Shown one piece after another: positions 15,188-59,936 of a DNA stretch of 64,000 nt; positions within the stretch are counted from its first letter, which is position 1; the number at the start of each line of letters is the position of its first letter. Source of the stretch: Mytilus californianus. Taxonomy: Eukaryota. Position numbers and translations under genes: made by a program. Below the pieces are notes generated by a model. That model was not told the origin of the DNA. It did no database searches and worked only from the letters and a program-made list of their open reading frames with translations. The stretch spans positions 112,468,001-112,532,000 of the forward strand of contig NW_026262712.1 in assembly GCF_021869535.1 (NCBI RefSeq), written 5' to 3'.

Positions 15188-17673
15188 TTAAGCTGTGTAT
15201 TTGTTAGAAACTATGCTATCTGCAAATAACATTCTCAGTCTTCTCCATGTATCTTCTAAACTGTAGGGATCCTTTGGCCATTCAATAAGATATGCATAAT
15301 TCCAAATGACGGAAAAGTCCACAGGAATATCAGTAATTGCTATATCTTTTGTAATGACAATAATACGCTCCAGAGTTTTTGTAATTTTCTCGTGTTTTGC
15401 TCTATCGAGTTCAAATAAACAATCACGTAAGGATTTGAATTCAGGCGTGATGAGAAAAATAATGGATCTGCTGTTTTGGATGCTTTCTGCTGTACTATCC
15501 GCAAGACTCGATCCACTTAAGAAATCTCGCTCTTTTATGCACATGGTCAGTCCCCACTCGTCCTCAAGTTTTGGTACTAAAACATCTTTAATCCAAATGG
15601 CAATTTCCCCTTCATATGATATATACACGTCATATTGATAGCTGTTATGAACTTTACGCTCAACAACACGGCGAATAATTCCATAAGTAAAAAATATGAT
15701 CTTCCATCTCTTACTATACACCACAAGCAGCAGTGATAATGTGATAAATGTAGAAAGTAATATCGAAGCCAGGGTTAACCACATAGTACTCTTACAGTCC
15801 GCAAACAATTCGGAAATAGAGTTATAGGCAATACGTGAATCAATTATTGTTCCATTTGATAATTTACATTTATATGATTGGCTGTCCAGATCAACTTTTG
15901 TAGCCTGTATCCACCTTATCAAATCTACATTATCACAAGTGCACTCAAATGCATTACCATCAAGATACAAGGTCATTCCATGGATTTCATGCATTTTATC
16001 TGCCCAATTTCTAATGGTCGAACTAACGCTTGTAAGGAGATTGTTTCTAACATCAAGCCTCTTTATTTTTGTAAGCGTACTCAGTTGTTCTGGAATAGAT
16101 TGTAGTAAATTGTTGGTTAAATAAAGGTTTGACAAATTTTGCAGTAGTTTAAATATATCGTCCGAAAAATACCATATATTATTTTCAGATATATCAAGTG
16201 TCTCGACAGATTGAACATTTGTGAACAAGTTGTTTCCTTTTTTTGTTTATTCCATCATTTAGGGCAGCGTTTTTCAATACAATCGTTTTTATGTTGTTTT
16301 TCGGAAATAGGTGTAATTCGATCCAAGTTGATGTGTACCTGGTTCCAGCAGAAATATATGTTTCTAGCCGAAGTGTCATAAAAAACATTGCAACAGTTGT
16401 AGTTGTATATGATATATCCAAATGAGTAAGGTTATTGATTGACGGAACTATAAACAAGGGTGGGTGTAACGGGTTTACTATTGTGAAACTAATATCTAAT
16501 TTTTCTAGTGATTTTGGTAATATAGCGTAACTTCCACTAGAACTTGTAAAATTCAAATTGGAATTTAAAGAACTTTTAATGATGAAGTTAACGACATTAT
16601 AAGAATAATCCAAAGATTTCAATGGTAAAGTTTTTCCAAAAAAAGAGTTAAGTTCTTTCTGATGTTTTCTTTTAGGAATCGAAAGTCTGTTTCCTTTCAA
16701 AGAAAGATGTTGTAAACATTCTGGGTAATCAAAGGAAAATAAAGAGCCATGTGTGTAATCAACTATTCCAGATTTTCTATGCAAATTGTTTTCAGATACT
16801 TCATGTTATCGGATGTAATTGTCAACGCATATGGGAACTCATCACTATCAATGACATGGCCAAGATTGATTGTAGTTAAAGATGCATTATTGTATGGATG
16901 TAAGAGTGTAATGCACGCGTAAGATGCATAAACGTCCCAAAAACGTCTTACGAACGAAAATTAGGAAACGGACACAAAGCACCAACTTCTGTTAACACAA
17001 AGTATAACCGACAATTTCTGAGAGACAGCTCTTCTACAGACGACGAAAACGTCTAGAATATTTCATTTGATAGACGTACTAAATAACAAGAATCAAAATG
17101 CAATTCTCCAAGGTTGGTCATTTGAATGAATCCGCTTCCGAAGTTTGGCAATGGCATCATATCAATTCCTAGGAAAGTCAATTCTCTCAGAACACCGAAC
17201 GCATGATCTGGATAGTCGAATTCCTTATTATAATTCTCAGGTTGAGGCATAATACTGCTGATATCCAATTTTATTAAGTTTTGAATTGGAAAAAAAAGTT
17301 GTGTTGAATATGCATAAGAAAAATCAATCGAATTGTGAGACATATCGAGCACGGCCAGATTGTGTAATCCCTGAAATGATTTATTCGATATATCCTCAAG
17401 TTTATTTTAGCCAAAATAAAGTTCTTGTAGATATTGATAAGTAATCAACGAACCGTTTTCAATACTTATTAACTGATTTGAAGATATATCTATAACATTT
17501 ATTTCCCTGGGTAAATTTTGAGGAACAAACTGCAGTCCTCTGTTTTTACAATCGGCTATTTTAACTCCGAATTTTCAATTAAATACATATTTGATATCAC
17601 AATCTGATGATCGAGAGATTTCATCACATAGAATTACAATACAAATTACTGCATAAATTATAACCCATACCAT
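15188..17673 (-). pseudogene. TLR: Toll-like receptor B, multiple lesions
   Basis: ATG at 17673 (MVWVIIYAVICIVILCDE), premature TGA at 17577-17575 (GGA in D and E), and several frameshifts/small deletions. Fragment ORFs 17053..17352 and 16194..16784, plus an intact LRR-CT/TM/TIR ORF 15188..16228. Confidence 0.9.
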
Positions 17674-23460: not shown

Positions 23461-25983
23461 CTATAGAGTTACTTGTTTGTTAGCAACTGACCCTACTGTG
23501 AATAACATTCTCAATCGTCTCCAAGTATCATCTAAATCTCCTTGATCATTCGGCCATTGTACAAGATATGCATAATTCCAAATGTACGAAAACTCGTAGG
23601 GAATGTCGGTAATTTTAATATTTTTTGTTATAACAATAATTTTGTCCAGATTTCTCGTTACTCTCTCATATTTAGCTCTGTGGAGTTCAAACAAGCAATC
23701 ATTTGACGTTTTGAACTCAGGTGTGATGAGGAAAATAATGTACCTACTCTTTTCGATACATTCGGCCTCAGTATCCAGAAGACTCTCACCACCTAAAAAA
23801 TCTCGATCTCTTATACACATGGTCAGTCCCCATTCGGCCTCAAGTCTTGGTACTAAGACATGTTTTATCCATATGACAATCTCTCCCTCATAAGACATAT
23901 ACACGTCGTACTGATAACTCTTCCGAACTTTTTGTTCAATAAAACTCTGAATTATTCCATAGACAGAGAAGGCAATCTTCCATCTCTTACTATACAACAC
24001 AAGCAGTAAAGAGATTGTACCAGATGTAGCTAACAACGTTGATGCAAAGGTTAACCACATAGTACTCTTACAATCCGCAAACAAGTGCGAGAACGAGTTG
24101 TAGGCAGTAAGTGTATCAGTAACGGTTCCATTCGATAATTTACATTTATAAGATTGACTGTCCAGATCAACTTTTGTAGTTTTTATCCATCGTATCAAGT
24201 CTAAACTATCGCAGTTGCACATAAATGCATTGCCATCGAGATGCAAAGTCATTCCATGCCGTTCTTGCATCTTATCTGCCCAATTTCTAATGGCTGAACT
24301 TACAGTTGTTAGGAGATTGTTTCTCACATCAAGCACCTTTATTTTAGTATGACCAATCAACTGTTCTGGAATAGCCTGAAGTAAATTTTTTCCTAAATAC
24401 AAACATGACAAATTTGGCATTGGTTTTAAAAACTCGTTTGGAAAATACCAAATATTATTTCTAGATATATCCAACGACTCAACAGATGTTAATACATCGA
24501 ACAACCGGTTTCCTTGTTCTTCTATTCCTTCATTAAGGTAAGCTTCTTTCCATACAACTGTTTTCAAATTGTGTTCAGGAAAACGTTTTATTTCTCTCCA
24601 GGCAGTTTCGTAGAGTCCAGTAGATATAAATGTTTCTATTCGAATTTGAAGAAAAAATAACGGCATATTGGTCCTTGCATAAGATACATCCAAATATTTG
24701 AGGTTGTTGTTTTCAGGAACTATAATCCATACTTCAGGGTAAGTGGTTAGTATTGTGTTACTCATATCGAATTTTTCTAGTGATTTTGGAAGTGTCACAT
24801 AACTACCATGATAACTATCTATCTCTAAATTGGAAATCACAGAGTTGTTCATGATATAGTTGACAGCATTATATGAATAGTCTATCGATTTTAGTAGAAC
24901 AGCTTTTCCACAAAAAGAATTAAAATCGCTAATCGTTCTTTTAGTAACAATAACAAACCGGTTTCTTTTAAAAGAAAGAGTTTGTAAACATTCAGGGCGA
25001 TCAAAGGTGAATAAAGATCCAGATTCGTAATCAACTATGCCATTATTTGATAAATCTAAATTTTCAACGCAAATTGTTTTCAGATATTTCATCATATCGG
25101 GTGTAATTGTTATAACAAAAGGTAGTTCACTGCTATCAATACTAGCGTCACTAACATGACCAAAATTAATTGTAGTTAGATTTGAATAACTGTACGGGTG
25201 TAATAAATGCAGTGCTCGTCTTAGATGCATAAATGTTCCGTGAAAATCTATTACACGGAGATGTGGAAACGGAAGCAAAACATCATCTTCCGTCCTTACG
25301 GCTTTTAAGCGACAATTTGTTAGACTAAGCTCCTGTACAAAATATGGAAACGCTTGAAATGTTGTATTAGACAAGCTTACTAAATAGCATGATTGAAAGT
25401 GTAATTCTCGAAGGTTAGTAATATGACTGAATCCCCTTCCAAAACGTGGCACAGGCATCATATCAATTCCTAAGAAGGACAACTCGCTCAGAACACCAAA
25501 TACGTCGTCGGGGTAAATAAAATCCTTATCAAAATCTATTGGTTGGGGCATATTACTTCTGATATCCAATTTTGTTAAGTTTTTAATTGGAAGAAATATT
25601 TCCGCTGAATATACTTTTGATAAATCAAGCATATTGTGAGACATGTCCAGCGCAACAAGGTTGGATAATCCTTTAAATGACTCATTAGATAAATCTTCAA
25701 GTTGGTTTTTTCCCAAAACCAGTTCTTGTAAGTACTCATAATTAACGAAAGAATCGTTGTTGATAGCTGTTAATTTGTTCGAACTAAGATCTAGAACATT
25801 GATATCTCCCGGTAAATTCTGAGGTATAAAATTCAGTCCTCTGTTTTTACAATCGGCTAATTTAACTTCCTTGGTTTTTTTAATAACATATTTGATATCA
25901 CAGTCTGATAAATGCAAGATTTTTTTACACTCAATAATCTTAACAATGTAAAAGATAACTAAATAAATCGAAATCCTCGTCAT
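23461..25983 (-). CDS. TLR: Toll-like receptor C, intact, 840 aa, single-cysteine-cluster type
   Basis: Uninterrupted ORF (track 23461..26088). The likely start is the ATG at 25983 (MTRISIYLVIFYIVKIIEC, signal-peptide-like), colinear with paralog F. It has LRR motifs (LxxLDLSxN), LRR-CT GNAFMCNCD..WI..C, TM MWLTFASTLLATSGTISLLLVLY, and TIR YDVYMSY..RDFL..FEL. Confidence 0.95.
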   Translation of the reverse strand: MTRISIYLVIFYIVKIIECKKILHLSDCDIKYVIKKTKEVKLADCKNRGLNFIPQNLPGDINVLDLSSNKLTAINNDSFVNYEYLQELVLGKNQLEDLSNESFKGLSNLVALDMSHNMLDLSKVYSAEIFLPIKNLTKLDIRSNMPQPIDFDKDFIYPDDVFGVLSELSFLGIDMMPVPRFGRGFSHITNLRELHFQSCYLVSLSNTTFQAFPYFVQELSLTNCRLKAVRTEDDVLLPFPHLRVIDFHGTFMHLRRALHLLHPYSYSNLTTINFGHVSDASIDSSELPFVITITPDMMKYLKTICVENLDLSNNGIVDYESGSLFTFDRPECLQTLSFKRNRFVIVTKRTISDFNSFCGKAVLLKSIDYSYNAVNYIMNNSVISNLEIDSYHGSYVTLPKSLEKFDMSNTILTTYPEVWIIVPENNNLKYLDVSYARTNMPLFFLQIRIETFISTGLYETAWREIKRFPEHNLKTVVWKEAYLNEGIEEQGNRLFDVLTSVESLDISRNNIWYFPNEFLKPMPNLSCLYLGKNLLQAIPEQLIGHTKIKVLDVRNNLLTTVSSAIRNWADKMQERHGMTLHLDGNAFMCNCDSLDLIRWIKTTKVDLDSQSYKCKLSNGTVTDTLTAYNSFSHLFADCKSTMWLTFASTLLATSGTISLLLVLYSKRWKIAFSVYGIIQSFIEQKVRKSYQYDVYMSYEGEIVIWIKHVLVPRLEAEWGLTMCIRDRDFLGGESLLDTEAECIEKSRYIIFLITPEFKTSNDCLFELHRAKYERVTRNLDKIIVITKNIKITDIPYEFSYIWNYAYLVQWPNDQGDLDDTWRRLRMLFTVGSVANKQVTL

Positions 25984-36414: not shown

Positions 36415-37883
36415 ATTTCATGCATCTGATCTGCCCAATTTCTAATGGATGAACTTATACTTGTAAGGAGATTGTTTCTAACATCAAGCACTTTCATTTT
36501 GTATGCGTATTTAGCTGTTCTGGAATAGATTGTAGTAAATTGTCAGTTAAATAAAGGTTTGACAAATTTGGCATTGGTTTGAATATATCGTCCGACAAAT
36601 ACCATATATTATTTTTTAGAATATATCAAGTGTCTCGACAGATTGAAGATTTGTGAATAAGTTGTTTCCTTTTCTGGTTATTCAGTGATTTAGGACAGCT
36701 TTTTTCAATACAATCGTTTTTATGTTGTTTTTCGGAAAAAGGCGTAATTGGTCCCAAGCGAAAGTGTACCCGGTTCCAGCAGAAATATATGTTTCTAGCC
36801 GAAGTGTCATAAAAAGCATTGAAATAGTTGTATTTGAATAAGATATATCCAAATAAGTAAGGTTATTGATTAACGTTACTATAAACAAAGGTAGAGGTAA
36901 TGGGTTTACTATTGTGAAACTAATATCTAATTTTTCTAGTGATTTTGGTAATATAGCGTAACTTCGAGATTTTCTATGCAAATTGTTTTCAAATTCTTTA
37001 TTATTTCGGATGTCAGTGTCAACGCATACGGGAGGTCTTTGCTATCAATACTTAGGTCACTTACATGGCCAAGATTGATTGTAGTTAAAGATGCATTAGT
37101 GTATGGATGTAACAGCTGTAATGCACGCGTAAGATGCATAAACGTTCCAAAAAAGTCTAAAGAACGAAAATTAGGAAACGGACACAAAGCGCCAACTTCT
37201 GTTGATACAAAGTGTAACTGACAATTTCTGAGCCAAAGTTCTTCTACAGAAGATGAAAGTGTCTGAAATGTTTCATTTGATAGGCGTACTAAATAACAAG
37301 ATTCAAAATGCAATTCTCCAAGGTTAGTCATTTGAATGAATCCGCTTCCGAAGTTTGGCACAGGCATCATATCAATTCCTAAGAAAGTCAATTCTCTCAT
37401 AACACCGAACGCATGATCGGGATAGTTGAATTCCTTATCATAATTCTCAGGTTGAGGCATATTACTCCTGATATCCAATTTTGTTAAGTTTTGAATCGGA
37501 AAAAAAAGTTCGGCTGAATATTCATAACATAAATCGAGCAAATTGTGAGACATATCAAGCACGGCAAGATTGTGCAACTCCTGAAATGACTTATTAGATA
37601 ATTGTTCAAGTTGATTTGAGCTCAAATAAAGTTCTTGTAGATATTTATAATTAATAAACGAACTGTTTCCAATACTTCTTAAATAATTTGAAGATATATC
37701 TAGAACATTTATATCCCTGGGTAAATCTTGAGGAACAAACTGCAGATCTCTGTTTTTACAATCAGCTATTTTAACTACAAGTTTTCCATTAAATACATAT
37801 TTGATATCACAATCTGATGATCGAGAGATTACATCACACTGAATTACAGTACAAAGTACTGCATAAATAATAATCCTTACCAT
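36415..37883 (-). pseudogene. TLR: Toll-like receptor D, ectodomain only, internally deleted and 3'-truncated
   Basis: ORF 36936..37883 (315 aa, signal+LRRs) goes out of frame at a ~250-bp deletion relative to B (~36968). Homology continues to WADQMHEI at ~36415 and then stops. No LRR-CT, TM or TIR is found nearby. Confidence 0.88.
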
Positions 37884-40800
37884 TTTTTTTGCATGAATCT
37901 CAAAAACTAAATTTTACATTAGTCCTAAGTAAAAATGGCTCTGTTAGTTTACAACACTCAAACCAAGCAACAGAGCTGAAATGATGTATATTGCTTTTAT
38001 AGAATTTCTTTTTTTATTTCTAACACATCGATATAATCTTACTATATTCAAAATAAAGTATTGACGTTATATGTATTTTAAAATTCATATATATATATAT
38101 ATATACTCACATTTCTATTCATCTCTTTGAACTGATATGCTAAGCCTCAATGATCACTACTTTAACGGTAGTGATTTGTTCTATTTCTTTACTGTATAAA
38201 ACGGTTATTAAAGGTATCCGTACTTTATCGTTGATCAAATATAAAAAAACATATAGAAAGCTACATTTCTAGGTTAAACACAAAAAAACTGGAGGAATTG
38301 CATACACTCTGAAAGTATCGTGGAGCGTTGACAGGGTAACCCTCTCCTGCTATATATTCATGACCGGCATATTTGCGGATGACATTGTATTTTAGTCGGT
38401 TACTCCATTCCCTGCATACATTAGTTTTTTTTAGGTTTCCATCACAAATCAAGTTCTCTCCTGTCAATCCCTCGGTACGATTTATTTGTTGTGCAAAAGA
38501 TAGGACAGACACTAAAAGGACATTCAAACTCATAAGTCGATAACAAACTTGCAATGCCATTGCAAAAAACAACCGAAAGACAAACAGCTGTACACAAAAC
38601 ACAACATAAAAAACTAAATGCAAAGCAAGATGAACAAGATCTCAATTAAGGTGGAGGGGAGGGGATGTTATCTCATGTGATACGCAAGGGTTATTGAATA
38701 GATCTGATTCATAGATTTCAACATTGATTGGTTACAGCTTCCTGTTTTTGTATATACAAGTGATCCCTGTCTTTTTTTTTTCTTCAACAGGTTTTGTCTC
38801 ATTTCCACAATTACATAGTTGTGACCAATACAATGCCATTAAACGATAACAAAACACACCGAGCGCTCAAACTTGGTTTTAAACAATATATATTCTATAA
38901 ATCAAATCATGATACGTATAAGATAATACATTATTTACAATTGGATCAAAAAACAATGGAACTTAATTACAGAGATTTATTATACCAAAAAGCCTTACTT
39001 GACAAATATTTACTAGGAGCAGGCACATAAACATGTATTTAGGCTTTTTTTAAATTTAAATCTCAACTGATTTTTCTATTCCGTGAAAAAAAGGCGGGAG
39101 AGACGAAAGGGATATTCAAACTCATAAATTGAAAACAACATGGCGATGTCATTTCAAAAATCCAAAAGATACAGTCTACGAAAAAACATAGAAAATTAAA
39201 AACTGAACAAAACAAACCCCACTAAAAACAGAGGGTGATCGCATGTGCTCCTTAAGGGTGAGCTAATCTTGCTGCACTTGCATTTGTCGTGTTACTCCTA
39301 TTATTGGCGTTACTAAGTTTTATCAAGTGATATATAAAACATCACGCAATAGCAGATAACTAATTGATTATAATGTAATCCTAAGATATCAGCATTTTCA
39401 TTAATGTATCGTTATCACTTGAAGTTCGTTGGCGTGATTTGTCGTTTATTATTATGTAAAACCGCCTCCTATATGAACTAACTATTTCAAAATGTTAGTC
39501 TGAACGTTGTATTGATATTTCTGGTGTTGTTTATATCGGACAGTTTCAATTAACAAAGTTCCTCTACTACCTTTACTGTTAAATGTTTATAGATGTGTTT
39601 GTACAAATACTAGTGTCACTGAACTGTCGTTTTATCTGTCAATACATGGTTCAAATTAACATGTTTTTATCTATAGTAGTCTGTATGAAACACTTTGTTT
39701 AAGTATACAGTATGATAACTTTGATATTGTTAAAGATAGAAAGATATTAATTTTAATGCACTGATAAACTTTAATATATGCAAACATTGGACATTTTTCT
39801 AGTATGAGGTACGACGTCAAGTGTATGTTAACATGCATGAATAACATTTTTACATCCATTCCTGATTTTTATACAATTATGTAAATTACACTAGTAGTTC
39901 ACTTTTATGTTTTACGTGTGATTTATTTTCTTTTATAAATTACAAAAGTAGCTTGTGCAAACTAAAATTAATTTATCAGAATATAATGTTATCTTACACA
40001 GATTCCAAAAATATATTGTTTGTGGTTCTTTCCTTTGAATAAGTGAGATGATCAGGTACTTCCGCTTTAAAACAGTCACTACATGTGTCATCTGAAAACG
40101 TACTTTCTTTCATTACAAATATATATATATGTGAAATAAGAAGAAAATTAGCTGTTCACTTTCGGTGTCATATGATAACTTTCATTACACTGCTCCGAAA
40201 ACAAAACATAGTTTCTTAATGTTATTGCTTACAATAAGGGAAATAATTTCTTACTTCCAGATTATATGAAATATTGATTTATACTGATGCTGAAGATATA
40301 ATGTAACTAGGTACTTTTACATGAAATAAGTATAGAAAAATTCAAGTAAACATTTACGAACGTTCTATTTTGCTTGCGTTTTTGAAGGTCATATGACATC
40401 CATTCTAATGCGAAGGATTATACGACCTGATCATGTAACAACATTAAGATATAGCAAAGGTCGAAATATAGAACGCAATTTTAAAATCCCAGGTTCATAT
40501 TATAAGAAGTATTCCTACCAAACACATTATTTTTAAAACTTCCAGTGAGAAATTAAACTTCTTGTAAATGTAACAAGAGCACTTCAACTCAAATGTATTT
40601 GCGTGTCGCAACTTAAAATTTACCTAAAACCGTATGTTGATTGCTTTTTACGGTTTTCTGATGAGTTGCTATAAAAAGATGAATTAAAAAATATGATAGA
40701 TTATTCATGAGTCAGGCGATATACTACCAAACAGATCATTTCAAATATTTTGGGGAGAAAACTTAAAAGTTACCAAAGCACTTCGACAGTTATGTATGAA

Positions 40801-42563
40801 GTTGTGAGATATCGTTAATAACCATTTGATATACAAAATCTTTTGTCAATAACTCTTATGGTTTCTGATGGTTAACGATAACATGCAAACTTCAAAATTA
40901 AAAAAGTAACATACACCTTTGACCTTGTTCTAGAATTTCTTTTGATCAAAAATGAACCCCAAGTCAGAAAACTTGGGCCTCTATTCATTTTGATAGATGA
41001 TCTACTTATATCTCTTATCATTAATACAGGAAAAAAGAAATAAAACACTCTCATACGGAGTCGCCAGATCGCTTTAGTCAAAATTAAACAGAACATTCTG
41101 AGAATATAACGAGAAATTTGGGAAATCAATTGTCAATTTTGTTTTTGGATGCGAACGAGTAATGAAAAACAGAGGACAGGGAGAAAATACAACTTGTTTG
41201 TTTACACAAGAGCAACTGCATAAGCATATTAATTGTTCAATATCATGTATTATGTGCCAAACATCTTTTCGATATCTGACAAAACAAAACTAAAAAACCT
41301 AAACATCTTGAAGTGACAGAGGAACGAAAATAGATTTAACGGAAAGATGGAATTAATTATGGTGCGAATACACATCCAAAATGTTCTTTCTCTAGTGTTA
41401 ATCGATTACTGTCATCATTTCTTAAAATCTTAAATGACGAGACAGAAGATCAAGATAAGTTTAAAAAAAGTGTTTGTATTATGCAACGTTCAAATAATAT
41501 ATTCGTTCAGATACTTAGTAGAAAACAAACGATACTGAATATTGCATGCAGTACAGACCATAACTTTCAAGTAATACAAGTTATCAGATAAATATAGAAA
41601 AAAGAAGATGTGGTATGATTGCCAATGAAATAATTCCCCCCACGAGACTAAATGATGTAGAAGTATGTAACTATAAGTCACCTTACAGCTTCAACAATGA
41701 TCAAACGGAATCCAACAAGGCAAGCTATAAAAGACCCTGAAACGACAATTGTAAAACAACTCAAATGCGAAAGCTATTTATGCACGAAACAATAAACAAA
41801 ACAATAACATGATAAAGATCAACAAACACCAACCACTGATTTACAGGCTCCTGAGTTAGTACATGCACATACAGAATAAGGAACTGTTAAACATGTTTTT
41901 TGGCGCCCAACCCTCCCCGTAACATACATGCATTTAACTAATACAATATGATTAAATATCAACATTACATGAATTTAACCAATAAAGAATTAAATAAGCA
42001 GTAGACATAATAGTACTTTATAATTCTTTAAAAAATTACATATCTATAGATATTCAAATGCTCATGAGTTCTTTTTTTGTTTTGTTTACGTTTGAAAGAT
42101 AAATTTGCGGAAACTATTCAGTAACCTTTGTTAAAACGTTGTCAATTTACCTGTATTGTGTGCAATATCTGATGGAATCCTTGTGTTTTAATAAAATAGT
42201 AATTAGGGGAAATACTAAAACATTTGGCGGAAAATTATAAGAATTAAGGTCAGATGACAGTAAATGGGTTATGCTACAGATTTTGGTTAATGTTGCATAC
42301 AACTTTGACTCGTTGAACTATTACCAAAAATCGAACAGTTAATGCATTTGTCTCTTATATGATTTGAATATTAATGATTGAACATTTGTATAGAAATCAC
42401 ATAAAATCGGCCAATACGTTCTTAAATGTTTCATAAAATCTGCAAACCTCCAGTTTCAAACTCATTGGTTTTTTTAATTACAAGACGTTGATACAACATT
42501 TCTGTAAATGATATTTAATAATAATGTTGTCACCGACTGTTGAAATCTCTATGGTGTTACTTG

Positions 42564-45061
42564 TTAATTATGAACTTGTCCATCTGTTAGCAACATCTTC
42601 AGTCGTCTCCAAGATTCATTTAAATCTCTTTGATCTTTCGGCCATTGTACAACATAGGCATAATTCCAAATGTACGAAAACTCCAAGGGAATATCGGTAA
42701 TTATAATATCTTTTGTTATAACAATAATTTTGTCTAGATTTTTTGTTACTGTCTCATATTTTGCTCTATCGAGTTCAAACAAGCAATCACGCGACGATTT
42801 GAACTCAGGTGTGATGAGGAAAATAATGTACCTACTGTTTTTGATACATTCGGCCTCAGTATCCAAAAGACTCTCACCAATTAAAAAATCTCGATCTTTT
42901 ATACACATGGTCAGTCCCCACTCGACCTCAAGTTTTGGTGCTAAGACATCTTTTATCCAAACGACTACCCCTCCTTCATTAGACATATACACGTCGTACT
43001 GGTATGTCTTTCGAACTTTTTGTTCAATACTACGCTGAATAACTCCATAGATAGAGAAGGCAATTTTCCATCTTTTACTATACAACAGAAGCAGTAACGA
43101 GATTGTAACACATGTAGATAACAATGTCGAAGCAAAGGTTAACCACATAGTACTCTTACAGTCCGCGAACAAGTGTGATAAGGAGTTGTAGGCAGTAAGT
43201 GTATCAGTAACGGTTCCATTTGATAATTGACATTTATAAGACCGACTGTCCAGATCAACTTTTGTAGTCTGTATCCATCGTATAAAGTCTAAATTATCGC
43301 AGTTGCAAATAAATGCATTGCCATCAAGGTACAAAGCCATTCCATGGATTTCATGCATTTTATCTGCCCAATTTCTAATGAGTGAATTTATACTTGTAAG
43401 GAGATTTTTCTAACATCAAGCACCTTTATGTTTGTTTGCGTATCCAGCTGTTCTGGAATAGATTGGAGAAAATTGTCAGTTAAATAAAGATTTGACAAAT
43501 TTGGCATTGGTTTAAAAATATCGTCCGAAAAATGCCAAATACTATTTTCAGATATATCCAGTGACTTGACTGATTGACATTTCATGAAAAACCTGTTTCC
43601 GTATGTGTCTATTCCATCATTAAGGGTAGCGTCTTTCAAAACTATTTTTTTTAGGTTGGTCTCTTGAAAACGATTTAATTCCTTCCAACCGAAACTTTAC
43701 CTCGTTCCAGCAGAAATAAATGTCTCTAATCGAAGTTCAATAAAAAGCATGGTCACAGTTGTATTTGTATAAGATATATCCAAATAAGTAAGATTATTGA
43801 TTTTAGGAACTATAAACAGTAAGGGTAATGTATTAACTATTGTGAAACTGATATCTAATTGTTCTAATGATGCTGGCAAGATTACGTGACTATCACCAGA
43901 ACTTTTAAAATCAGAATCTGAGGTCAATGAATTTTCAATGAAGAAGTTGACGACATTATATGAATAATCCAAAGTTTGCAATCGCAAAGCTTTTCTAAAA
44001 AAAGAGTTAATCTCTTCGTGATTTTTTATATAAGCTAGTAAAAGTCTGTTTCCTTTCAATGAAAGATGTTGTAAACATTCTGGTTGATCAAAGGAAAGTA
44101 AAGATCCATGTTTGTAATCAACTATTCCATTCTGTGATAAATCTAGATTTTCTATGCAAATGGATTTCAGATTTGTCATTATATCGGATGTAATTGTCAG
44201 AGCATACGGGAAGTCGTCGCTATCAATAGTTAGGTCACTCACATGGCCAAAATTAATTGTGGTCATATTTCTATAACGGTATGGATGTAAAAGTAGTAAA
44301 GCACGAGTGAGGTGCATAAACGTTCCAAAAAAATCCAGTACACGTAGATGTGGAAATGGACTCAAAGCGTCATCTTCTGTTTTCACAAATTTTAATCGAC
44401 AATTTCTGAGATAAAGCTCTTCTACAGATGATGAAAACGTCTGGAATGTTTCATTTGATAGACGTACCAAATAACAAGATTTAAAGTATAATTTCCGAAG
44501 TTTCTTCATTTCACTGAATCCGCTTCCGAAGTTTGGCACAGGCATCATATCAATTCCTAAGAAAGTCAATTCTCTCAGAACACCGAACGCATGATCGGGA
44601 TAGTTGAATTCCTTATCATAATTCTCAGGTTGAGGCATATTACTCCTGATATCCAATTTTGTTAAGTTTTGAATCGGAAAAAAAAGTTCGGCTAAATATG
44701 CATAAGATAAATCAAGCAAATTGTGAGACATATCAAGCACGGCAAGATTGTATAATCCCTGAAATGACTTATCAGATAAATATTTAAGTTGATTCGTTCT
44801 CAAATAAAGTTCCTGTAGATGTGGATAAATAATCAGCGAACTGTTTTCAATACTCTTTAACCGATTTGAAGATATATCTAGAACATTTATATCCCGAGGT
44901 AAATCTTCAGGAATAAACTGCAGTCCTCTGTTTTTACAATCAGCTATTTTGACTCCGAGTTTTCCATTAAATACATATTTAATATCACAATCTAATGATC
45001 GAGAGATTTCATCACACTGAATAACAATATAAATTACTGAGTAAATTAGAATCCGCACCAT
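42564..45061 (-). pseudogene. TLR: Toll-like receptor E, full-length chimeric copy with an in-frame stop and a frameshift
   Basis: ORF 43697..45061 (454 aa) ends at an in-frame TAA (AGTR*, where B reads AGTRY) and the frame continues (SFGWKELNRF..KDATLNDG). There is a 1-nt loss in an A-run near 43405 (DVRKISLQV* instead of DVRNNLL). ORF 42564..43358 encodes LRR-CT, TM and TIR. Confidence 0.88.
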
Positions 45062-45669
45062 TTTGTGACATGGATATCAAAAACAGGACTTTCACATGGT
45101 TTCTATAGTAACAATGACTTTGTAAGTCAACAACACTTTATATCTAGGACACAAAGGTCGACAAATGGAATTTTAACATCTTAAATTGGTTTCAATATAT
45201 AGGACGCATGTATTAATACTTTACTATTTTTAAGATATTATATTGATTTTAAACATGTCTACACGTCATGCAAGTTCTTGTTTTTACAAATTTATTTACC
45301 TTTTACTCTATCAATTGACCAAATATTTGAATTTTCTGTTATATTCAAAGAGAAACAACCGCGTACTTATTAAATGGGGACAGGATAATATTGTATTTTG
45401 AAGAAAAAATATGAAATTCCAGACACAAGAGAAAAAGCAAGTATTCGAAATAGTTAAATAAATTATCAGCCTTTTATTGGTCATGAAACAAGACAAAATA
45501 CATGGCATCTCCCTTTGTAAAATTGATGTAATAAATTACTTACAAGTGACTTTTAAATTTTGTACACCGTACCAATTCATTATTTCTTTCTTCATATACC
45601 ATCTCAATTATATTTTGTTATTGTGGACAGTAATTATAAAGTTTAATATGTAGTTAGTTACTGTACGGT

Positions 45670-45800
45670 TCTCTCTGCCGACCTCTCCTTCCTTTCATAG
45701 GATTTGAATTTCCTTCAGACACTTGTCAAAACAGGAAGAACAAAGAAGCAAGATCATTTAATTTCACATTCAGATATATTGATGATGTTCTTGCCATTAC
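45670..45800 (+). mobile_element. Short Penelope-like RT fragment abutting the truncated end of TLR E2
   Basis: atttaatttcacattcagatatattgatgatgttct encodes FNFTFRYIDDVL. Confidence 0.7.
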
Positions 45801-45812
45801 CAATCCGAACAA

Positions 45813-46690
45813 GATGTAATTGTCGTAACAAAAGTTAGGTCACTGCCATCAATACTGTCGTCAATAACATGACCAAAATTTACTGTGATTAGATTTGAAT
45901 AGCTGTACAGGTGTAATGAATGCAGTGCTCGTCTCAAATGCATAAACGTTGCATGAAAGTATATTACACGGAGATTTGGAAACGAAAGCAGAGAACCATC
46001 ATCCGTCCTTACGGCTTTTAGTCGACAATTTGTAAGACTAGACTAAGCTCCTGTAGAAAATATAAAAACGCTTGGAATATTGTATTAGACAAGCTTACTA
46101 AATAGCATGATTGGAAGTGTAATTTTGCAGGTTAGTAATATGACTGAATCCCCGTCCTACTTCTTGTACAGGCATCATATCAATTCATAAGAATGACAAT
46201 TCACTTAGAACACCAAATACATGGTCGGAATAAATAAAATCCTTATTAAAATCTATTGGTTGGGGCATATTACGTATGAGTCTTCTGATATCCGATTTTG
46301 TTAAGTTTTTTATTTGAAGAAATATAACCGTTGAATATACGTTTGATAAATCAAGCATATATGAGACATGTCAAGCTTAGCAAGATTATATAATCCTTTA
46401 AATGGATCACAAGATAGATCTTCAATTTGGTTTTTTTTCCAAAATCAGTTCTTGTAAGTACTTATAATTAACGAAAGAGTCATTTTAAATAGCTGTAAAT
46501 TGGTTTGAACTGAGATCTTGAACATTGATATCTCCCGGTAAATTCTGAGGTATAAAATTTGTTTTTACAATCAGCTAACTTAACTTCCTGGATTTTCCTA
46601 ATAACATATTTGTTATCAGAGTCTGATAAATGTAAGATTTTGTTACACTCAATAATTTTAAGAATGTAAACAATAAGTAAATAAATGATA
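45813..46690 (-). pseudogene. TLR fragment E2: degraded 5' part of a C/F-type gene
   Basis: DNA is colinear with C 25100-25975 and F 51520-52390 (e.g. ctccggtaaattctgaggtataaaa, ctattggttggggcatatta). It has frameshifts, and the start codon region is deleted so the sequence joins directly to upstream DNA homologous to C ~26390. Confidence 0.85.
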
Positions 46691-49879: not shown

Positions 49880-52402
49880 TTATAAAGTTACTTGTTTGTT
49901 AGCAACTGACCCATTGTTAAGCAATATCCTCAGTTTCCTCCAAGTATCATCTAAATCCTCTGGATCCTTCGGCCATTGTACAAGATATGCATAATTCCAA
50001 ATGTACGAAAACTCATAGGGAATATCGGTAATTCTAATATCTTTTGTTATAACAATAATTTTCTCCAAATTTTTTGTTACTCTCTCATATTTTGCTCTGT
50101 CGAGTTCAAACAAAAAATCGTGTGACGATTTGAAATCGTGTGTGATGAGGAAAATAATGAACATACTGTTTTGGATACAATCGGCTTCAGTATCCAAAAG
50201 ACTGTCACCAATTAAAAAATCTCGATCTTTTATGCACATGGTCAGTCCCCATTCGGCCTCAAGTTTTGGTACTAATACGTTTTTTATCCAAACGACTACC
50301 TCTCCTTCATAAGACATATACACGTCGTACTTGTATCTTTTGCGAACTTTTTTTTCAATAGTACGCTGAATTACGCCATAGATAGAGAAGGCAATCTTCC
50401 ATCTCTTACTATACAACACTAGCAGTAAAGAGATTGTAACACATGTAGATAACAATGTTGAAGCAAAGGTTAACCACATAGTACTCTTACAGTCCGCAAA
50501 CAAGTGTGATAAGGAGTTGTAGGCGGTAAGTGTATCAGTAACGGTTCCATTCGGTAATTGACATTTATAAGTTTGACTGTCCAGGTCAATTTTTGTATTT
50601 TTGATCCATTTTATAAAGTCTAAATTATCGCAGTTGCACATAAATGCATTGCCTTCGAGATACAAAGTCATTCCATGCCGTTCTTGCATCTGATCTGCCC
50701 AATTTCTAATGGTTGAACTCACACTTGTAAGGATATTATTTCTAAAATCAAGCACCTTAATTTTAGTATGATCAATCAACTGTACCGGAATAGCCTGAAG
50801 TAAATTTTCTCCTAAATACAAACTTGACAAATTTGGCATTGGTTTTAAAAGCTCGTTCGGAAAATACCAAATGTCATTTCGAGATATATCTAACGACTCA
50901 ACAGATGATAATACTTCGAACAACCGGTTTCCTTGTTTTTCTATTCCTTCGTTAAGGTAAGCCTCATTCAATACAACGGTTTTCAAATTTTTGCCAGGAA
51001 AACGTTTTATTTCACTCCAGGCAGTTTCGTATAATCCAGTAGAAATAAATGTTTCTATTCGAATTTTAAGAAAAAGTAATACCATATTAGTCCTTTGATA
51101 AGATTTATCTAAGTATTTGAGGTTGTTGTTTTCAGGAAATATAAAGAATATCGGAGGGTATGTGCTTAGTATTGTGTAACTCATATCTAATTTTTCTAGT
51201 GATTTTGGTAATATCGCATAACTGCCATGAGACTTATCTATCTCTAAATTTGAAATCACAGGGTTGACGATTTTATAGCTGACAGAATTATATGAATAGT
51301 CTATCGATTTCAATAGAACAGCTTTTCTGCAAAAAGAATTAAAATCACTAACCGTTCTCTTATTAACAATAGCAAACCGGTTTCTTTTAAAAGACATATT
51401 TTGTAAACATTCCGGGTGATCAAAGGAGAATAAAGATCCGGATTCGATATCAACAATTCCATTATCCGATAAATCTAGATTTTTTACGCAAATTGTTTTT
51501 AGATATTTCATCATATCAGGTGTAATTGTCGTAACAAAAGGTAGCTCACTGCTATCAATACTGTCGTCACTAACATGACCAAAATTTATTGTGGTTAGAT
51601 TTGAATAGCTGTACGGGTGTAATAAATGCAGTGCTCGTCTTAGATGCATAAACGTTGCGTGAAAGTCTATAACACGGAGATTTGGAAACGGAAGCAAAGA
51701 ATCAACATCCGTCCTTACGGCTTTTAGTCGACAATTTGTAAGACTAAGATTCTGTACAAAATATGAAAATGTTTGGAATGTTGTATTAGACAGGCTTACT
51801 AAATAGCATGATTGGAAGTGTAATTCTCGAAGTTTAGTAATATGACTGAATCCCCTTCCAAATTTTGGCACAGGCATCATATCAATTCCTAAGAATGACA
51901 ACTCACTCAGAACACCAAATACATGGTCGGGATAAAAAAAAACCTTATCAAAATCTATTGGTTGGGGCATATTACTTCTGATATCCAATCTTGTTAAGTT
52001 TTTAATTGGAAGAAATATTTCCGCTGAATATGCTTTTGATAAATCAAGCATGTTATGAGACATGTCAAGCGCATCAAGATTGTATAATCCTTTAAATGAC
52101 TCACTAGATAAATCCTCAATTTGGTTTTTTCCTAAAATCAGTTCCTGTAAGTCCTTATAATTAACGAAAGAATAATTTTTAATAGCTGTTAATTGGTTCG
52201 AACTAAGATCTAGCACATTGATATCTCCCGGTAAATTCTGAGGTATAAAACTCAGTCCTTTGTTTTTACAATCGGCTAATTTTACATCCAGTGATTTTTT
52301 AACAACATATTTGATATCACAATCGGACAAACGTATGAATTGTTTACACTCAATCATGTTAGAAATGTTATACATAACTAAATAAATCATAATCCTCATC
52401 AT
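49880..52402 (-). CDS. TLR: Toll-like receptor F, intact, 840 aa; close paralog of C
   Basis: 840-aa ORF with the same signal-LRR-LRRCT-TM-TIR layout; same length as C and the same C-terminus GSVANKQVTL. Confidence 0.95.
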   Translation of the reverse strand: MMRIMIYLVMYNISNMIECKQFIRLSDCDIKYVVKKSLDVKLADCKNKGLSFIPQNLPGDINVLDLSSNQLTAIKNYSFVNYKDLQELILGKNQIEDLSSESFKGLYNLDALDMSHNMLDLSKAYSAEIFLPIKNLTRLDIRSNMPQPIDFDKVFFYPDHVFGVLSELSFLGIDMMPVPKFGRGFSHITKLRELHFQSCYLVSLSNTTFQTFSYFVQNLSLTNCRLKAVRTDVDSLLPFPNLRVIDFHATFMHLRRALHLLHPYSYSNLTTINFGHVSDDSIDSSELPFVTTITPDMMKYLKTICVKNLDLSDNGIVDIESGSLFSFDHPECLQNMSFKRNRFAIVNKRTVSDFNSFCRKAVLLKSIDYSYNSVSYKIVNPVISNLEIDKSHGSYAILPKSLEKLDMSYTILSTYPPIFFIFPENNNLKYLDKSYQRTNMVLLFLKIRIETFISTGLYETAWSEIKRFPGKNLKTVVLNEAYLNEGIEKQGNRLFEVLSSVESLDISRNDIWYFPNELLKPMPNLSSLYLGENLLQAIPVQLIDHTKIKVLDFRNNILTSVSSTIRNWADQMQERHGMTLYLEGNAFMCNCDNLDFIKWIKNTKIDLDSQTYKCQLPNGTVTDTLTAYNSLSHLFADCKSTMWLTFASTLLSTCVTISLLLVLYSKRWKIAFSIYGVIQRTIEKKVRKRYKYDVYMSYEGEVVVWIKNVLVPKLEAEWGLTMCIKDRDFLIGDSLLDTEADCIQNSMFIIFLITHDFKSSHDFLFELDRAKYERVTKNLEKIIVITKDIRITDIPYEFSYIWNYAYLVQWPKDPEDLDDTWRKLRILLNNGSVANKQVTL

Positions 52403-57052: not shown

Positions 57053-57432
57053 TTATTTATATGTTAGCAGTGATAATATTGTTTTTTCTACTTCGTGATA
57101 TTTATGACATTGCTTTGTCATCACCATGTATTATCATTGCAGTATGGACATACAGTACCGGTGATATTTATCTATACCTGTACTGTCATTGTAGTAGGGA
57201 CATGCTGAACTGGTGACATTTATATATACCTTTATTATCATTAATAAATAACTGTAGATTGCACTAGAATCCCTTTACTTTGATAATATATAAATGTATA
57301 GAATACAATATTATTTTGCATGTGTTTATCAGCTAACAAAAGTATTGTTGAAATGAATTATTTTTGTAAAAAAAAACAAAAAAAAACATTTTTGTGGTAT
57401 GTGCATTGCCTTGATAATTTCTATAATGATAT

Positions 57433-59936
57433 CTATTGTTTAGCAATTAACCCATCAGTAAGCAGCATCCTCAGTTTCCTCCAAGTATCATCCAAATCCT
57501 CTAGATTTGTCGGCCATTGTACAACAAATGCATAATTCCAAATGTACGAAAACTCTACAGGAATGTCAGTTATTGTTATATTTTTTGTAATGAAAATAAT
57601 ACGCTCAAGATTTTTTGTAATTCTCTCATATTTTGCCCTGTCAAGTTCAAACATGCAATCACGTGACGATAGGAATTCAGGCGTGATGAGAAATATAATG
57701 GCTCTACTGTTTTGAATGCTTTCTGCCTCGTTGTCCGCTTGACTCGGTCCAGGTAAAAAATCTCGATCTTTTATACACATCGTCAGTCCCCACTCGGTCT
57801 CAAGTTTTGGTATTAATACATTTTTAATCCAAATGACAATATCCCCTTCATATGAGATATACACGTCATATTGGTAAATCCTCCAGACTTTGCGCTCAAC
57901 AACACGTCGAATTACTCCATAAATAGAAAAGATGATTTTCCATCTCCTGTTATAGGCTAAAAGTAACAGTGAGATCGTGATAAATGTCGATAATAATGTT
58001 GATGCAAAAGTTAACCACATAGTATTCTTACAGTCAGCAAACAAGTCATATAGAGAGTTGTATGCAATAAGTGTGTCAATAACTGTTCCGTTGGACAATT
58101 TACATTTATATGATCGGCTGTCGAGATTAACCTTTGTAGTCTGTATCCATCTTATCAAGTCTATATTGTCACAATTGCACTCAAGTGCATTATCAGTGAG
58201 CTGTAACGTCATTCCATGACGCTCTTGCATCTTATCTGCCCAGCCCCTGATGGTTGAACTTACACTTGTCAATCGATTCTTCCTTACGTCAAGCATCTTT
58301 ACTTTAGTATGATCGCTCAGTTGAACCGGAATAGACTGAAGTGAATTTTTACTTAAAAAAAGATATGTCAAGTTTGGCATTGGATTTAATAGGTCGTCCG
58401 GAAAATACCAAATATCAATTTCAGATATATCCATTGACTGGATAGATCTTATACCTTTAAAGAACTGATTTCCGTATAGTCTTATTGCATCATCTTGTCG
58501 GCGTTTTTCCATACAATCGTTTTCAGAGTATTATAGGAAGAACGTTTTAATTGATTCCATGCAAATGAATAGTCTCCACCATTAGAAATGAATGTTTCAA
58601 CTCGAATTTGAAGAATAAGTATGGCAATATTTGAATTTGAATAAGATACATCAACATATATAAGGCTGTTATTTTTAGGAACTATTAGATATATTATTGG
58701 GAACGTATTTGCTATTGTGTAACTAAGATAAATTTTTTCAAGTGACTTTGGTAATATCACACAACTGTGAAGTGAACAATTTAAATCTGAATTTGAAGTA
58801 ACTGAATTTTTCATCACATAGTTGACAGCATTATATGAATAGTCGATCGATTTCAATTTAACAGTTTTACTAAAAAATATTTGTATCTCATTTAGATTTT
58901 TATCGCTAAAAAGCATAAACCGGTTCCTTTTAAATGAAATATGTCGTAAACATTTCGGGTGATTGAAGGAGAACAAAGATCCAGGCTCATAATCTACTAT
59001 TCCATTTTCGGATAAATCAAGATTTTCTACACAAATAGTTTTTAGGTTCTTCATTATGTCCACTGTAATTGTCAGAACATACGGGATATCGGCCCTGTCA
59101 ATACTAACGTCACTCACATGACCGAAGTTTATTGTCGTAATATTTTTATTACAGTATGGATGTAATAGTTGCAATGCGTGCTTCAAATGCATGAATGTTC
59201 CAAAAAAATCTATTACACGGAGTTTTGGAAATGGCAATAATGCGTTATCTTCTGTAACAACAAAGTGTAACCGACAATTTCTAAGAGTCAGCTGTTCTAC
59301 AGAGGATGAAAATCTCTGAAAGGTTCTATTTGACAAACGTACTAAATAACATGAGTCGAAGTGTAATTGTTTTATAATCGTCATTTTACCGAATCCGCTT
59401 CCAAAGTGTGGCAAAGGCATCATATCGATTCTTAAAAAAGACAACTCTGTCAGAATACTGAATGCATGGTCGGAATAAATATAATCCGTAACAAAATCTA
59501 TCGGCTGAGGCATATTACTCCTGATATCCAATTTTGTTAAGTTTGTAATTGGATGAAATAGTTCTGCTGAATATACTTTAGATAAATTAAGTAGGTTTTC
59601 AGACATGTCGAGTATTGCAAGTTTTTGTAATCCTTCAAATGATTTGTTAGATAAATAACAAAGTTGATTGTGACTCAGGTAAAGTTCTTGTAGGTATTTA
59701 TAATTAACAAAAGAACTGTTCCAAATCATTCGTAACAGATTAAAACTCATATCTAGAACATTTATATCTCCCGGTAAATCCTGAGGTATAAAAGTCAGTC
59801 CTTTGTTTTTACAATCTGCTATTTTTACTTCCTCATTTTCCTTAAATACATATTTGATATTGCAGTCTGATGCATATACGAATTCATTACAGATGATGAT
59901 AATAGATAATACTGAATAAAGTATAATCCTCTCCAT
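57433..59936 (-). pseudogene. TLR: Toll-like receptor G, full length with one frameshift near 58495 (or assembly indel)
   Basis: Overlapping ORFs 58482..59936 (signal+LRRs, 484 aa) and 57433..58512 (LRRs, LRR-CT, TM, TIR). Comparison with paralogs (KDATLNDGIDTYGNRF) suggests KNAD-x-DDAIRLYGNQF with 1 nt missing. Confidence 0.85.

What the first reader, a model, noticed from the sequence alone, without database searches (positions are those of the whole stretch)
42380..45061. TLR E is a chimera: B/D-type ectodomain fused to C/F-type TM-TIR and 3' flank
The N-terminus of E matches D and B (MVRILIYSV..CDIKYVFNGKLGVKIADCKNRGLQF) through MHEIHGM. From CNCDNLDF onward it matches C/F (TVTDTLTAYNSLSHLFADC, KIAFSIYGVIQ, SLLDTEAEC), not B (TIIDSRIAYNSISE, KIIFFTYGIIRR, SLADSTAES). 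Its 3' flank also matches those of C and F. The switch maps to ~43321-43343, at the start of the LRR-CT. This is sensor/signalling module swapping by unequal crossover, a route to new receptor combinations.
Basis: seen in the sequence. Interest (0 to 1): 0.7.

Follow-up and report, generated by a model that had tools for sequence, protein, structure and literature searches.

The report
Old chimeric mussel Toll-like receptor gene
Copy E in this mussel Toll-like receptor array really is a hybrid of two paralogue types, but the hybrid arose before Mytilus species diverged, was kept under selection, is intact in M. trossulus and is a broken pseudogene here, so it is a clean example of a known process.

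Summary
E (45061-42555, minus strand) is B/D-type from about 190 nt upstream of its ATG to 43346. It is C/F-type from 43334 through the stop and 172 nt of 3' flank.

- **Switch:** maximum chi-square places it at 43326-43320 (chi2 112, 0 of 2000 permutations).
- **Trees:** the two halves give conflicting trees, each with 100/100 support, and AU tests reject the swapped placements.
- **Silent sites:** E-B rises from dS 0.38 to 0.77 across the switch and E-C falls from 0.73 to 0.27, while B-C stays at 0.77-0.86. E is therefore the recombinant, not B.

The interpretation needs correcting on three points.

1. **The event is old.** The genome is Mytilus californianus. Syntenic loci in M. trossulus, M. 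edulis and M. coruscus carry the same chimera and the same upstream C/F-type relic (E').
2. **This copy is dead.** It has an in-frame stop (43699-43697) and a 1-nt deletion (43407/43406). The M. trossulus orthologue is an intact 839-aa gene, and dN/dS between the two is about 0.22 in both halves, so the hybrid receptor functioned for a long time. Lesions differ between species.
3. **The mechanism is not settled.** Unequal crossover is not distinguishable from replacement of the middle of one C/F-type gene by a B/D-type cassette.

Paralogue exchange of this kind is already described for TLR1/TLR6 and for mollusc Tolls. This scan had not reported this finding on other DNA.

The parts
42555..45061 (-). 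Copy E: chimeric Toll-like receptor pseudogene (LRR ectodomain, LRR-CT, TM, TIR)
   Evidence: tblastn with B and F; Pfam LRR_8 and TIR on its pieces; lesions
43346..45250 (-). B/D-type part of E: about 190 nt of 5' flank plus codons 1 to about 578
   Evidence: Identity 83-84% to B and D against 72% to C and F; clade (E,(B,D)) 100/100; upstream homology to D reaches about -190
43334..43346 (-). Recombination joint, in register, in the last LRR just before the CNC motif of the LRR-CT
   Evidence: Max chi-square 43326-43320; lineage-diagnostic sites 43353-43346 are B/D-type and from 43334 C/F-type; it lies at the 3' edge of an 86-nt block that is 85-89% identical between the two types
42564..43333 (-). 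C/F-type part of E: LRR-CT, transmembrane helix, TIR; ends at a TAA four codons early (42566-42564)
   Evidence: 88% identity to C and F, 76% to B; clade (E,C,F) 100/100; dS 0.27-0.28 to C and F, 0.77 to B
42380..42563 (-). 3' flank of E, homologous to the 3' flanks of C and F only
   Evidence: Local alignment scores against shuffles; blastn HSPs
43697..43699 (-). In-frame TAA stop (codon 455 of E)
   Evidence: exact contig 43613-43777 in run X1 and contig 43519-44024 in run X3
43406..43407 (-). 1-nt deletion (frameshift) relative to all other copies and to three orthologues
   Evidence: exact contig 43338-43544 in the independent run X3
45251..45811 (-). Spacer of unknown origin between E' and E; conserved in the three other species; no TLR coding trace
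   Evidence: 79.6% over the whole spacer in M. coruscus
45812..46690 (-). E': decayed C/F-type 5' relic (codons about 4-295) with many frameshifts and stops
   Evidence: groups with F 99/95; relics at the same place in L001, L002 and L003
40626..41527 (-). Block downstream of E, homologous (73%) to the block downstream of F (49065-48154)
   Evidence: a weaker match at 460-791, so a repeat element is not excluded
36415..38468 (-). Copy D: truncated B/D-type pseudogene whose homology ends at the E-equivalent position 43349
15188..17673 (-). Copy B: B/D-type pseudogene with its own type of TM/TIR part
23464..25983 (-). Copy C: intact C/F-type gene (840 codons)
49883..52402 (-). Copy F: intact C/F-type gene (840 codons)
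57424..59936 (-). Copy G: outgroup paralogue with one 1-nt deletion
   Evidence: orthologue in L001

Best explanation
E is the Mytilus californianus copy of an old hybrid Toll-like receptor lineage. Before the living Mytilus species separated, one in-register homologous exchange joined two genes.

- The 5' part came from a B/D-type gene: about 190 nt of flank plus the signal peptide and nearly all LRRs, to about codon 578.
- The 3' part came from a C/F-type gene: LRR-CT, transmembrane helix, TIR domain and 3' flank.
- The joint lies at the edge of the DNA block that is best conserved between the two types, which is where homologous pairing is easiest.

The hybrid gene then evolved under purifying selection as a working receptor. 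It is still intact in M. trossulus and has been disabled independently in other species. In this window the disabling changes are a stop codon and a 1-nt deletion.

Shown: the chimera, the joint, which lineage is the recombinant, the age, the past constraint and the present lesions.

Inferred: the route. I put about 45% on unequal crossover between neighbouring genes, with the upstream relic E' being a separately truncated gene. I put about 40% on replacement of the middle of a single C/F-type gene (E' plus the 3' part of E) by a copied B/D-type cassette, homologous at its 3' end and end-joined at its 5' end. The remaining 15% covers other routes.
For: Chimera: sliding identity, segment identities, max chi-square with 0/2000 permutations, conflicting DNA trees at 100/100, and AU tests with p 4e-96 and 1e-9.

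Not a constraint effect: the switch is also seen at silent sites, with B-C unchanged.

Flank.

Species and age:
- The window's own proteins lie on a 120,330,192-bp contig shared with proteins named M. californianus.
- P0003, an 839-aa M. trossulus protein, is the best match of both halves of E, at 84-85%.
- Protein trees place E with P0003 and P0018 next to B and D in the ectodomain (100/100). They place E with P0003 inside the C/F clade after the switch (clade 100/100, pair 93/97). AU p values are 7e-7 and 2e-5.
- The syntenic order G, E' relic, spacer, E is seen in L001, and the same E', spacer, E order in L002 and L003.
- The trossulus gene has its own significant breakpoint at 43403-43392.

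Function in the past: dS between E and the trossulus gene is 0.31 and 0.30 in the two halves, with dN/dS 0.23 and 0.21.

Independent decay: the lesions are at different places in californianus, edulis and coruscus.

Lesions here are backed by contigs of an independent run.
Against: - No contig listed bridges 43346-43320, so in this species the joint rests on the assembly. Three other assemblies show the same joint.
- E is closer at silent sites to C and F (0.27-0.28) than the trossulus orthologue is (0.46-0.47). This implies either later short conversion inside M. californianus or rate differences. A fully independent conversion in each species is not formally excluded, because no trossulus C/F-type gene was in the tree.
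- An outgroup clade does not resolve whether the B-type 3' part is the native partner of B/D-type ectodomains (AU p 0.50 against 0.42). That E rather than the C/F ancestor is the recipient rests on parsimony and on the flanks.
- The small indels in M. coruscus may be assembly errors.
- RNA evidence is negligible: 9 reads, mostly partial.
Confidence: 0.8

Rival explanations
1. One reading: a recent unequal crossover within this very array, between neighbouring B/D-type and C/F-type copies, made E as a new receptor combination in M. californianus.
For: In-register joint. C/F-type 3' flank. Tandem array with alternating types.
Against: The same chimera, spacer and E' relic occur at syntenic loci in three other species. 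dS to the trossulus orthologue is uniform across both halves. The nearest in-window relatives of either half are 12-17% diverged. The copy is a pseudogene.
Confidence: 0.04
2. Recurrent gene conversion of the TLR1/TLR6 kind: in each species the C-terminal part of the E gene is repeatedly overwritten by a neighbouring C/F-type gene.
For: E is slightly closer at silent sites to C and F (0.27-0.28) than to its orthologue (0.30). In the first 122 residues after the switch E sits nearer F than P0003. There are scattered sites where E follows C or F against its three orthologues. Precedent in PMC2077338.
Against: E and P0003 are sisters over the whole 3' part, 93/97. Orthologue identity is the same in both halves, 89-91%. 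The C/F-like tract runs through the stop into the 3' flank instead of ending inside the gene. There are no long identical tracts between E and C or F (the longest run spans 45 nt).
Confidence: 0.1
3. E is not the recombinant: the C/F ancestor took its 3' part from the E lineage, and B later replaced its own 3' part.
For: Outgroup placement of the 3' parts is unresolved.
Against: This needs two events instead of one. B|G,C shows no breakpoint (387/2000). A second B-type gene on the same chromosome (P0020) pairs a B-type ectodomain with a B-type 3' part. E is bracketed by C/F-type sequence on both sides (E' upstream, 3' flank and a downstream block).
Confidence: 0.04
4. Assembly artefact: collapsed or mis-joined tandem paralogues created a false chimera.
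For: No listed short-read contig bridges the joint.
Against: Four assemblies of four species show the same joint. Read-derived contigs of two studies match both sides exactly and depth is continuous.
Confidence: 0.01

Closest known systems
Gene conversion between mammalian TLR1 and TLR6 (Kruithof et al. 2007, PMC2077338), and the vertebrate TLR1 family generally (PMC3125219; title and abstract only seen)
   Same: Tandem TLR paralogues exchange the C-terminal module (last LRRs, LRR-CT, TM, TIR) while the ectodomains stay distinct. It is detected by conflicting trees and breakpoint tests. The 5' boundary lies in the late LRRs.
   Different: There the tract ends inside the TIR, the 3' UTR is not included, and the events recur independently in each species, keeping paralogues alike. 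Here there is one old exchange that runs through the stop into the 3' flank, inherited by four species, joining two clearly different subfamilies.
[quoted passage not shown]
   Same: Mollusc Toll/TLR paralogues with statistically detected mosaic segments.
   Different: That paper gives program-level signals from coding sequences. It does not, in the passages read, give genomic context, flanks, orthologous loci or the fate of a product. The large bivalve TLR survey PMC10279657 does not mention recombination, conversion or chimeras at all.
Birth-and-death evolution of expanded invertebrate TLR families (sea urchin, PMC3367398)
   Same: Tandem intronless TLRs with many pseudogenes and fast turnover. 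In this window only 2 of 8 copies are intact.
   Different: That paper does not discuss exchange between paralogues.

Membership tests
Toll-like receptor (type I LRR-TM-TIR receptor) | Leucine-rich-repeat ectodomain | tested here: met
   Pfam LRR_8 at 1.2e-19 and LRR_4 on the 454-aa piece of E; the same families on F
Toll-like receptor (type I LRR-TM-TIR receptor) | C-terminal TIR domain | tested here: met
   Pfam PF01582 at 1.1e-11 on the 3' piece of E
Toll-like receptor (type I LRR-TM-TIR receptor) | LRR-CT cysteine motif followed by one transmembrane helix | tested here: inconclusive
   A CNC motif and a hydrophobic stretch of about 23 residues are visible in the translation. No predictor was run.
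Toll-like receptor (type I LRR-TM-TIR receptor) | Uninterrupted reading frame | tested here: not met
   TAA at 43699-43697 and a 1-nt deletion at 43407/43406. The M. trossulus orthologue is intact.
Inter-paralogue recombinant gene | Significant breakpoint and well-supported conflicting trees on either side | tested here: met
Inter-paralogue recombinant gene | The switch is also seen at silent sites, so it is not caused by differing constraint | tested here: met
   dS E-B 0.38 to 0.77, E-C 0.73 to 0.27, B-C 0.77 to 0.86
Unequal crossover product | In-register joint with the 5' flank of one parent type and the 3' flank of the other | tested here: inconclusive
   The joint is in register and the 3' flank is C/F-type. 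The 5' flank is B/D-like for only about 190 nt, and a C/F-type relic lies upstream.
Unequal crossover product | Loss of the DNA between the parents, or a reciprocal product | not testable with these tools
   No pre-event locus was available. No reciprocal type (C/F ectodomain with B-type TIR) appeared among 19 full-length relatives.
TLR1/TLR6-type concerted gene conversion | Tract bounded on both sides within the gene | tested here: not met
   C/F-type similarity continues through the stop into 172 nt of flank
TLR1/TLR6-type concerted gene conversion | Independent recurrence in each species, so that paralogues of one species group together | tested here: not met
   E and P0003 are sisters at 93/97 and orthologue dS is uniform. 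No trossulus C/F-type gene was in the tree, so this is not final.

The most novel reading that the evidence does not exclude
The boundary between the last LRR and the LRR-CT may be a recurrent breakage and exchange point in mussel TLR genes, a built-in seam at which ectodomain cassettes are swapped or lost. Two things hint at this. The young truncated copy D loses homology 2-15 nt from the old E joint. The block just upstream of the joint is among the best conserved between subfamilies. If true, a genome-wide survey would find many TLR chimeras and truncations ending at this same position.
Probability: 0.1. Interest if true: 0.6.

Novelty: new member of a known kind. Interest (0 to 1): 0.35.

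Why it matters
Bivalves hold the largest TLR repertoires known. The survey read here explains them by duplication and divergence only. This locus gives a fully resolved case in which an ectodomain of one subfamily was joined to the signalling half of another. The product was kept under purifying selection across the Mytilus radiation and is now being lost independently in several species. It shows that module exchange contributes to receptor diversity in mussels, and it supplies a natural hybrid, intact in M. trossulus, for testing whether ligand-binding and signalling halves are interchangeable. It does not reveal a new mechanism.

Tried and rejected
- **Assembly artefact:** rejected by three other species' assemblies.
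- **Similarity from stronger constraint on the TIR:** rejected by silent-site distances.
- **B as the recombinant:** control triplets show no breakpoint.
- **Outgroup test of which 3' part is native to B/D-type genes:** inconclusive.
- **Spacer 45811-45251 as decayed TLR coding sequence or as B/D upstream flank:** no trace beyond about -190.
- **Region downstream of D (below 36415):** no repeats, ORFs or homology that explain its truncation.
- **Expression:** one RNA run gave 9 mostly partial reads, so nothing can be said.
- **Contigs in run X1 with an extra G after 43406, which would restore the frame:** their summed depth is 205 against about 40-60 for single-copy pieces. B and D are identical to E over that short block apart from the extra base. 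They are therefore best read as paralogue contigs. An intact allele is not excluded.
- **Searching the database for an intact E-like protein with E alone:** not possible, because of the tool's length limit and the rule on stops. I used a profile of F plus the three E pieces instead.
Full report
**What is in the window.**

| Copy | Coordinates | State |
|---|---|---|
| A | 12233-11628 and 7739-5924 | Split by a 3.9-kb insert |
| B | 17673-15188 | Pseudogene |
| C | 25983-23464 | Intact |
| D | 38468-36415 | Truncated |
| E | 45061-42555 | The finding |
| F | 52402-49883 | Intact |
| G | 59936-57424 | One 1-nt deletion |

Pfam finds LRR_8/LRR_4 and TIR domains on F and on the pieces of E. Only C and F are open reading frames. 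B has three frameshifts and several stops, and A, D and E' are badly decayed.

- On a MAFFT alignment of all copies, E is most like B and D from its start to about 43435, and most like C and F from about 43340 to 42700.
- Segment identities in the ectodomain are E-B 82.8, E-D 84.1, E-C 72.7 and E-F 71.6. After the switch they are E-C 88.1, E-F 88.5, C-F 87.9, E-B 76.3 and B-C 76.0.
- Maximum chi-square on informative sites puts the breakpoint at 43326-43320 (chi2 112 with parents B and C, 123 with B and F, 0 of 2000 permutations). Triplets without E give weak or no signal.
- DNA trees give (E,(B,D)) 100/100 before the joint and (E,C,F) 100/100 after it. AU tests reject E with C/F in the first part (p 4e-96) and E with B in the second (p 1e-9).
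- The 3' flank of E aligns with those of C (score 113 against a shuffle maximum of 34, 42551-42380) and F (46 against 35), and not with those of B, G or A.
- With four orthologues in the alignment, the last B/D-type diagnostic sites are 43353-43346 and the first C/F-type site is 43334.

**It is recombination, and E is the recombinant.** Nei-Gojobori silent-site distances remove the objection that TIR domains are simply better conserved.
- E-B goes from dS 0.38 to 0.77 across the joint, and E-C from 0.73 to 0.27.
- B-C stays at 0.77 and 0.86, and C-F at 0.24 and 0.29.
- After the joint E, C and F form a three-way split of equal depth, and B is as far from E as from C and F.
- A second B-type gene on the same chromosome (P0020) pairs a B-type ectodomain with a B-type 3' part.
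- The alternative, in which the C/F ancestor borrowed its 3' half from the E lineage, needs a second replacement in B and does not explain the C/F-type sequence on both sides of E. An outgroup clade could not settle this formally (AU p 0.50 against 0.42).

**The copy in the window is broken.** E carries a TAA at 43699-43697 (codon 455) and lacks one base at 43407/43406 that all other copies and all three orthologues have. It also ends four codons early.
- Contigs from an independent DNA study match 43338-43544 exactly, and 43519-44024 with one difference at an unlisted position.
- A contig of another run matches 43613-77 exactly, that is 43613-43777.
- Contigs with an extra base after 43406 have several-fold higher depth and are best explained as paralogue sequence.
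- No listed contig bridges the joint itself.
- The one RNA run gave only nine, mostly partial, reads. Expression is therefore unknown.

**The chimera is old and was functional.** A word search with a profile of F plus the three pieces of E returned only Mytilus proteins. It also showed that the window's own products lie on a 120,330,192-bp contig shared with proteins named M. californianus.
- P0003, an 839-aa M. trossulus protein, is the best match of both halves of E, at 84.3% and 84.9%.
- In protein trees E groups with P0003 and the M. edulis protein P0018 next to B and D for the ectodomain (100/100). For the 3' part E groups with P0003 (93/97) inside the C/F clade (100/100). AU tests reject the swapped placements (p 7e-7 and 2e-5).
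- The M. trossulus locus is syntenic, in the order G orthologue, short C/F-type 5' relic, spacer, E orthologue, with 84.7% identity running from the spacer through the 3' flank.
- M. edulis and M. coruscus show the same relic, spacer and chimeric gene.
- The trossulus gene has its own significant breakpoint at the equivalent of 43403-43392.
- Between E and the trossulus gene, dS is 0.31 before and 0.30 after the joint, with dN/dS 0.23 and 0.21. The hybrid was therefore under purifying selection for most of the time since the species split.
- The lesions differ by species. Californianus has a stop and a 1-nt deletion. Edulis has a 254-nt deletion at codon 643, which gives the TIR-less model P0018. 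Coruscus has a 61-nt deletion and small indels, in an older assembly that may contain errors. Trossulus has none.

**How it was made.** The joint is colinear with no indel, so it was made by homologous pairing. It sits at the 3' edge of an 86-nt block that is 85-89% identical between B/D-type and C/F-type genes, against about 71% for the ectodomain as a whole. That block holds exact runs of 20-28 nt. Two routes fit.

The upstream relic E' would then be a separately truncated C/F-type gene.
2. **Cassette replacement.** A single C/F-type gene, made of E' (codons about 4-295) and the 3' part of E (from about codon 583), had its middle replaced by a copied B/D-type cassette. The 3' end joined by homology and the 5' end by end-joining.

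In favour of the second route:
- E' and the 3' part of E are complementary and do not overlap.
- E' keeps a trace of C/F-type upstream flank (clearer in L001).
- The 3' flank and a downstream block resemble those of F.
- The arrangement is ancestral to four species.

In favour of the first route:
- It is simpler, and pseudogene fragments are frequent in this array.
- B/D-type homology upstream of E ends at about -190.
- The 0.56-kb spacer has no recognisable origin.

I cannot separate the two routes and give them about 45% and 40%.

**Later exchange.**
- D and E share a 121-nt identical tract at 44692-44581 (43 variable sites, 0 of 2000 permutations).
- Between 44828 and 44528 there is a cluster of sites where E follows D against its three orthologues.
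- E is also somewhat closer at silent sites to C and F than the trossulus gene is (0.27 against 0.46).

Short gene conversion within M. californianus is the likely cause. This is why I leave 10% for a recurrent-conversion reading.

**Unexplained.** D, a young copy (B-D dS 0.21) that is absent from the trossulus locus, loses all homology at the E-equivalent position 43349-43348, 2-15 nt from the old joint. The two cannot be one event. It may be chance, since several boundaries were inspected, or it may hint at a fragile or exchange-prone seam.

**Comparison with what is known.**
- Exchange of the C-terminal module between tandem TLR paralogues is well described for TLR1/TLR6. There the tracts cover LRR16-19, LRR-CT, TM and most of the TIR, end inside the gene, and recur independently in each species (PMC2077338).
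- Recombination signals in mollusc Toll genes have been reported from RDP, Geneconv and MaxChi (PMC4929906).
- The large bivalve TLR survey and the sea-urchin TLR paper do not mention recombination, conversion or chimeras.

The present case is therefore a new, unusually well-resolved member of a known kind. It is a single old exchange between subfamilies, inherited, constrained and then decaying.

**Verdict.** The interest is moderate to low.

Noticed in passing
window 36415-36420 (end of D), against 43349-43334 in E: The truncated copy D loses homology to B and E within 2-15 nt of the E recombination joint, although D is much younger than the chimera.
   Followed up: partly
window 44581-44692, and 44528-44828: A 121-nt tract is identical between D and E, and there is a cluster of sites where E follows D against its three orthologues. 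This is later short gene conversion inside the array.
   Followed up: partly
window, all TLR copies: Only C and F are intact. G has a single 1-nt deletion at 58498. B, A, D and E' are decayed. Three copies carry lesions at codons about 296-310: the end of E', a 16-nt deletion in B and a 250-nt deletion in D.
   Followed up: partly
window 45740-45805 and 42300-42450: Short stretches with very high word depth in DNA runs (over 100,000 and about 5,000 in run X1). These are high-copy repeats next to E' and downstream of E.
   Followed up: no
window 46554-46557 joined to 44921-44922 (run X1, table 5c): Contigs join homologous positions of E' and E with 3-5 odd letters between them. This is either another paralogue elsewhere or a recombinant allele.
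   Followed up: no
L001 (M. trossulus) 5944-8391, against window 57416-46690: The intact gene F and its flanks (about 8 kb) are absent between the G orthologue and the E' relic in M. trossulus but present in M. coruscus (L003). No D-like copy lies within 10 kb downstream of the trossulus E orthologue.
   Followed up: partly
L002 7919 (M. edulis): The edulis E orthologue has a 254-nt deletion that removes the TM-proximal part of the TIR region. The annotated 643-aa 'toll-like receptor 2' is therefore a TIR-less product of a broken gene.
   Followed up: partly
window 7739-11628: Copy A is split by a 3.9-kb insert, already noted by the scan. blastn confirms that the two halves abut in TLR coordinates.
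   Followed up: no
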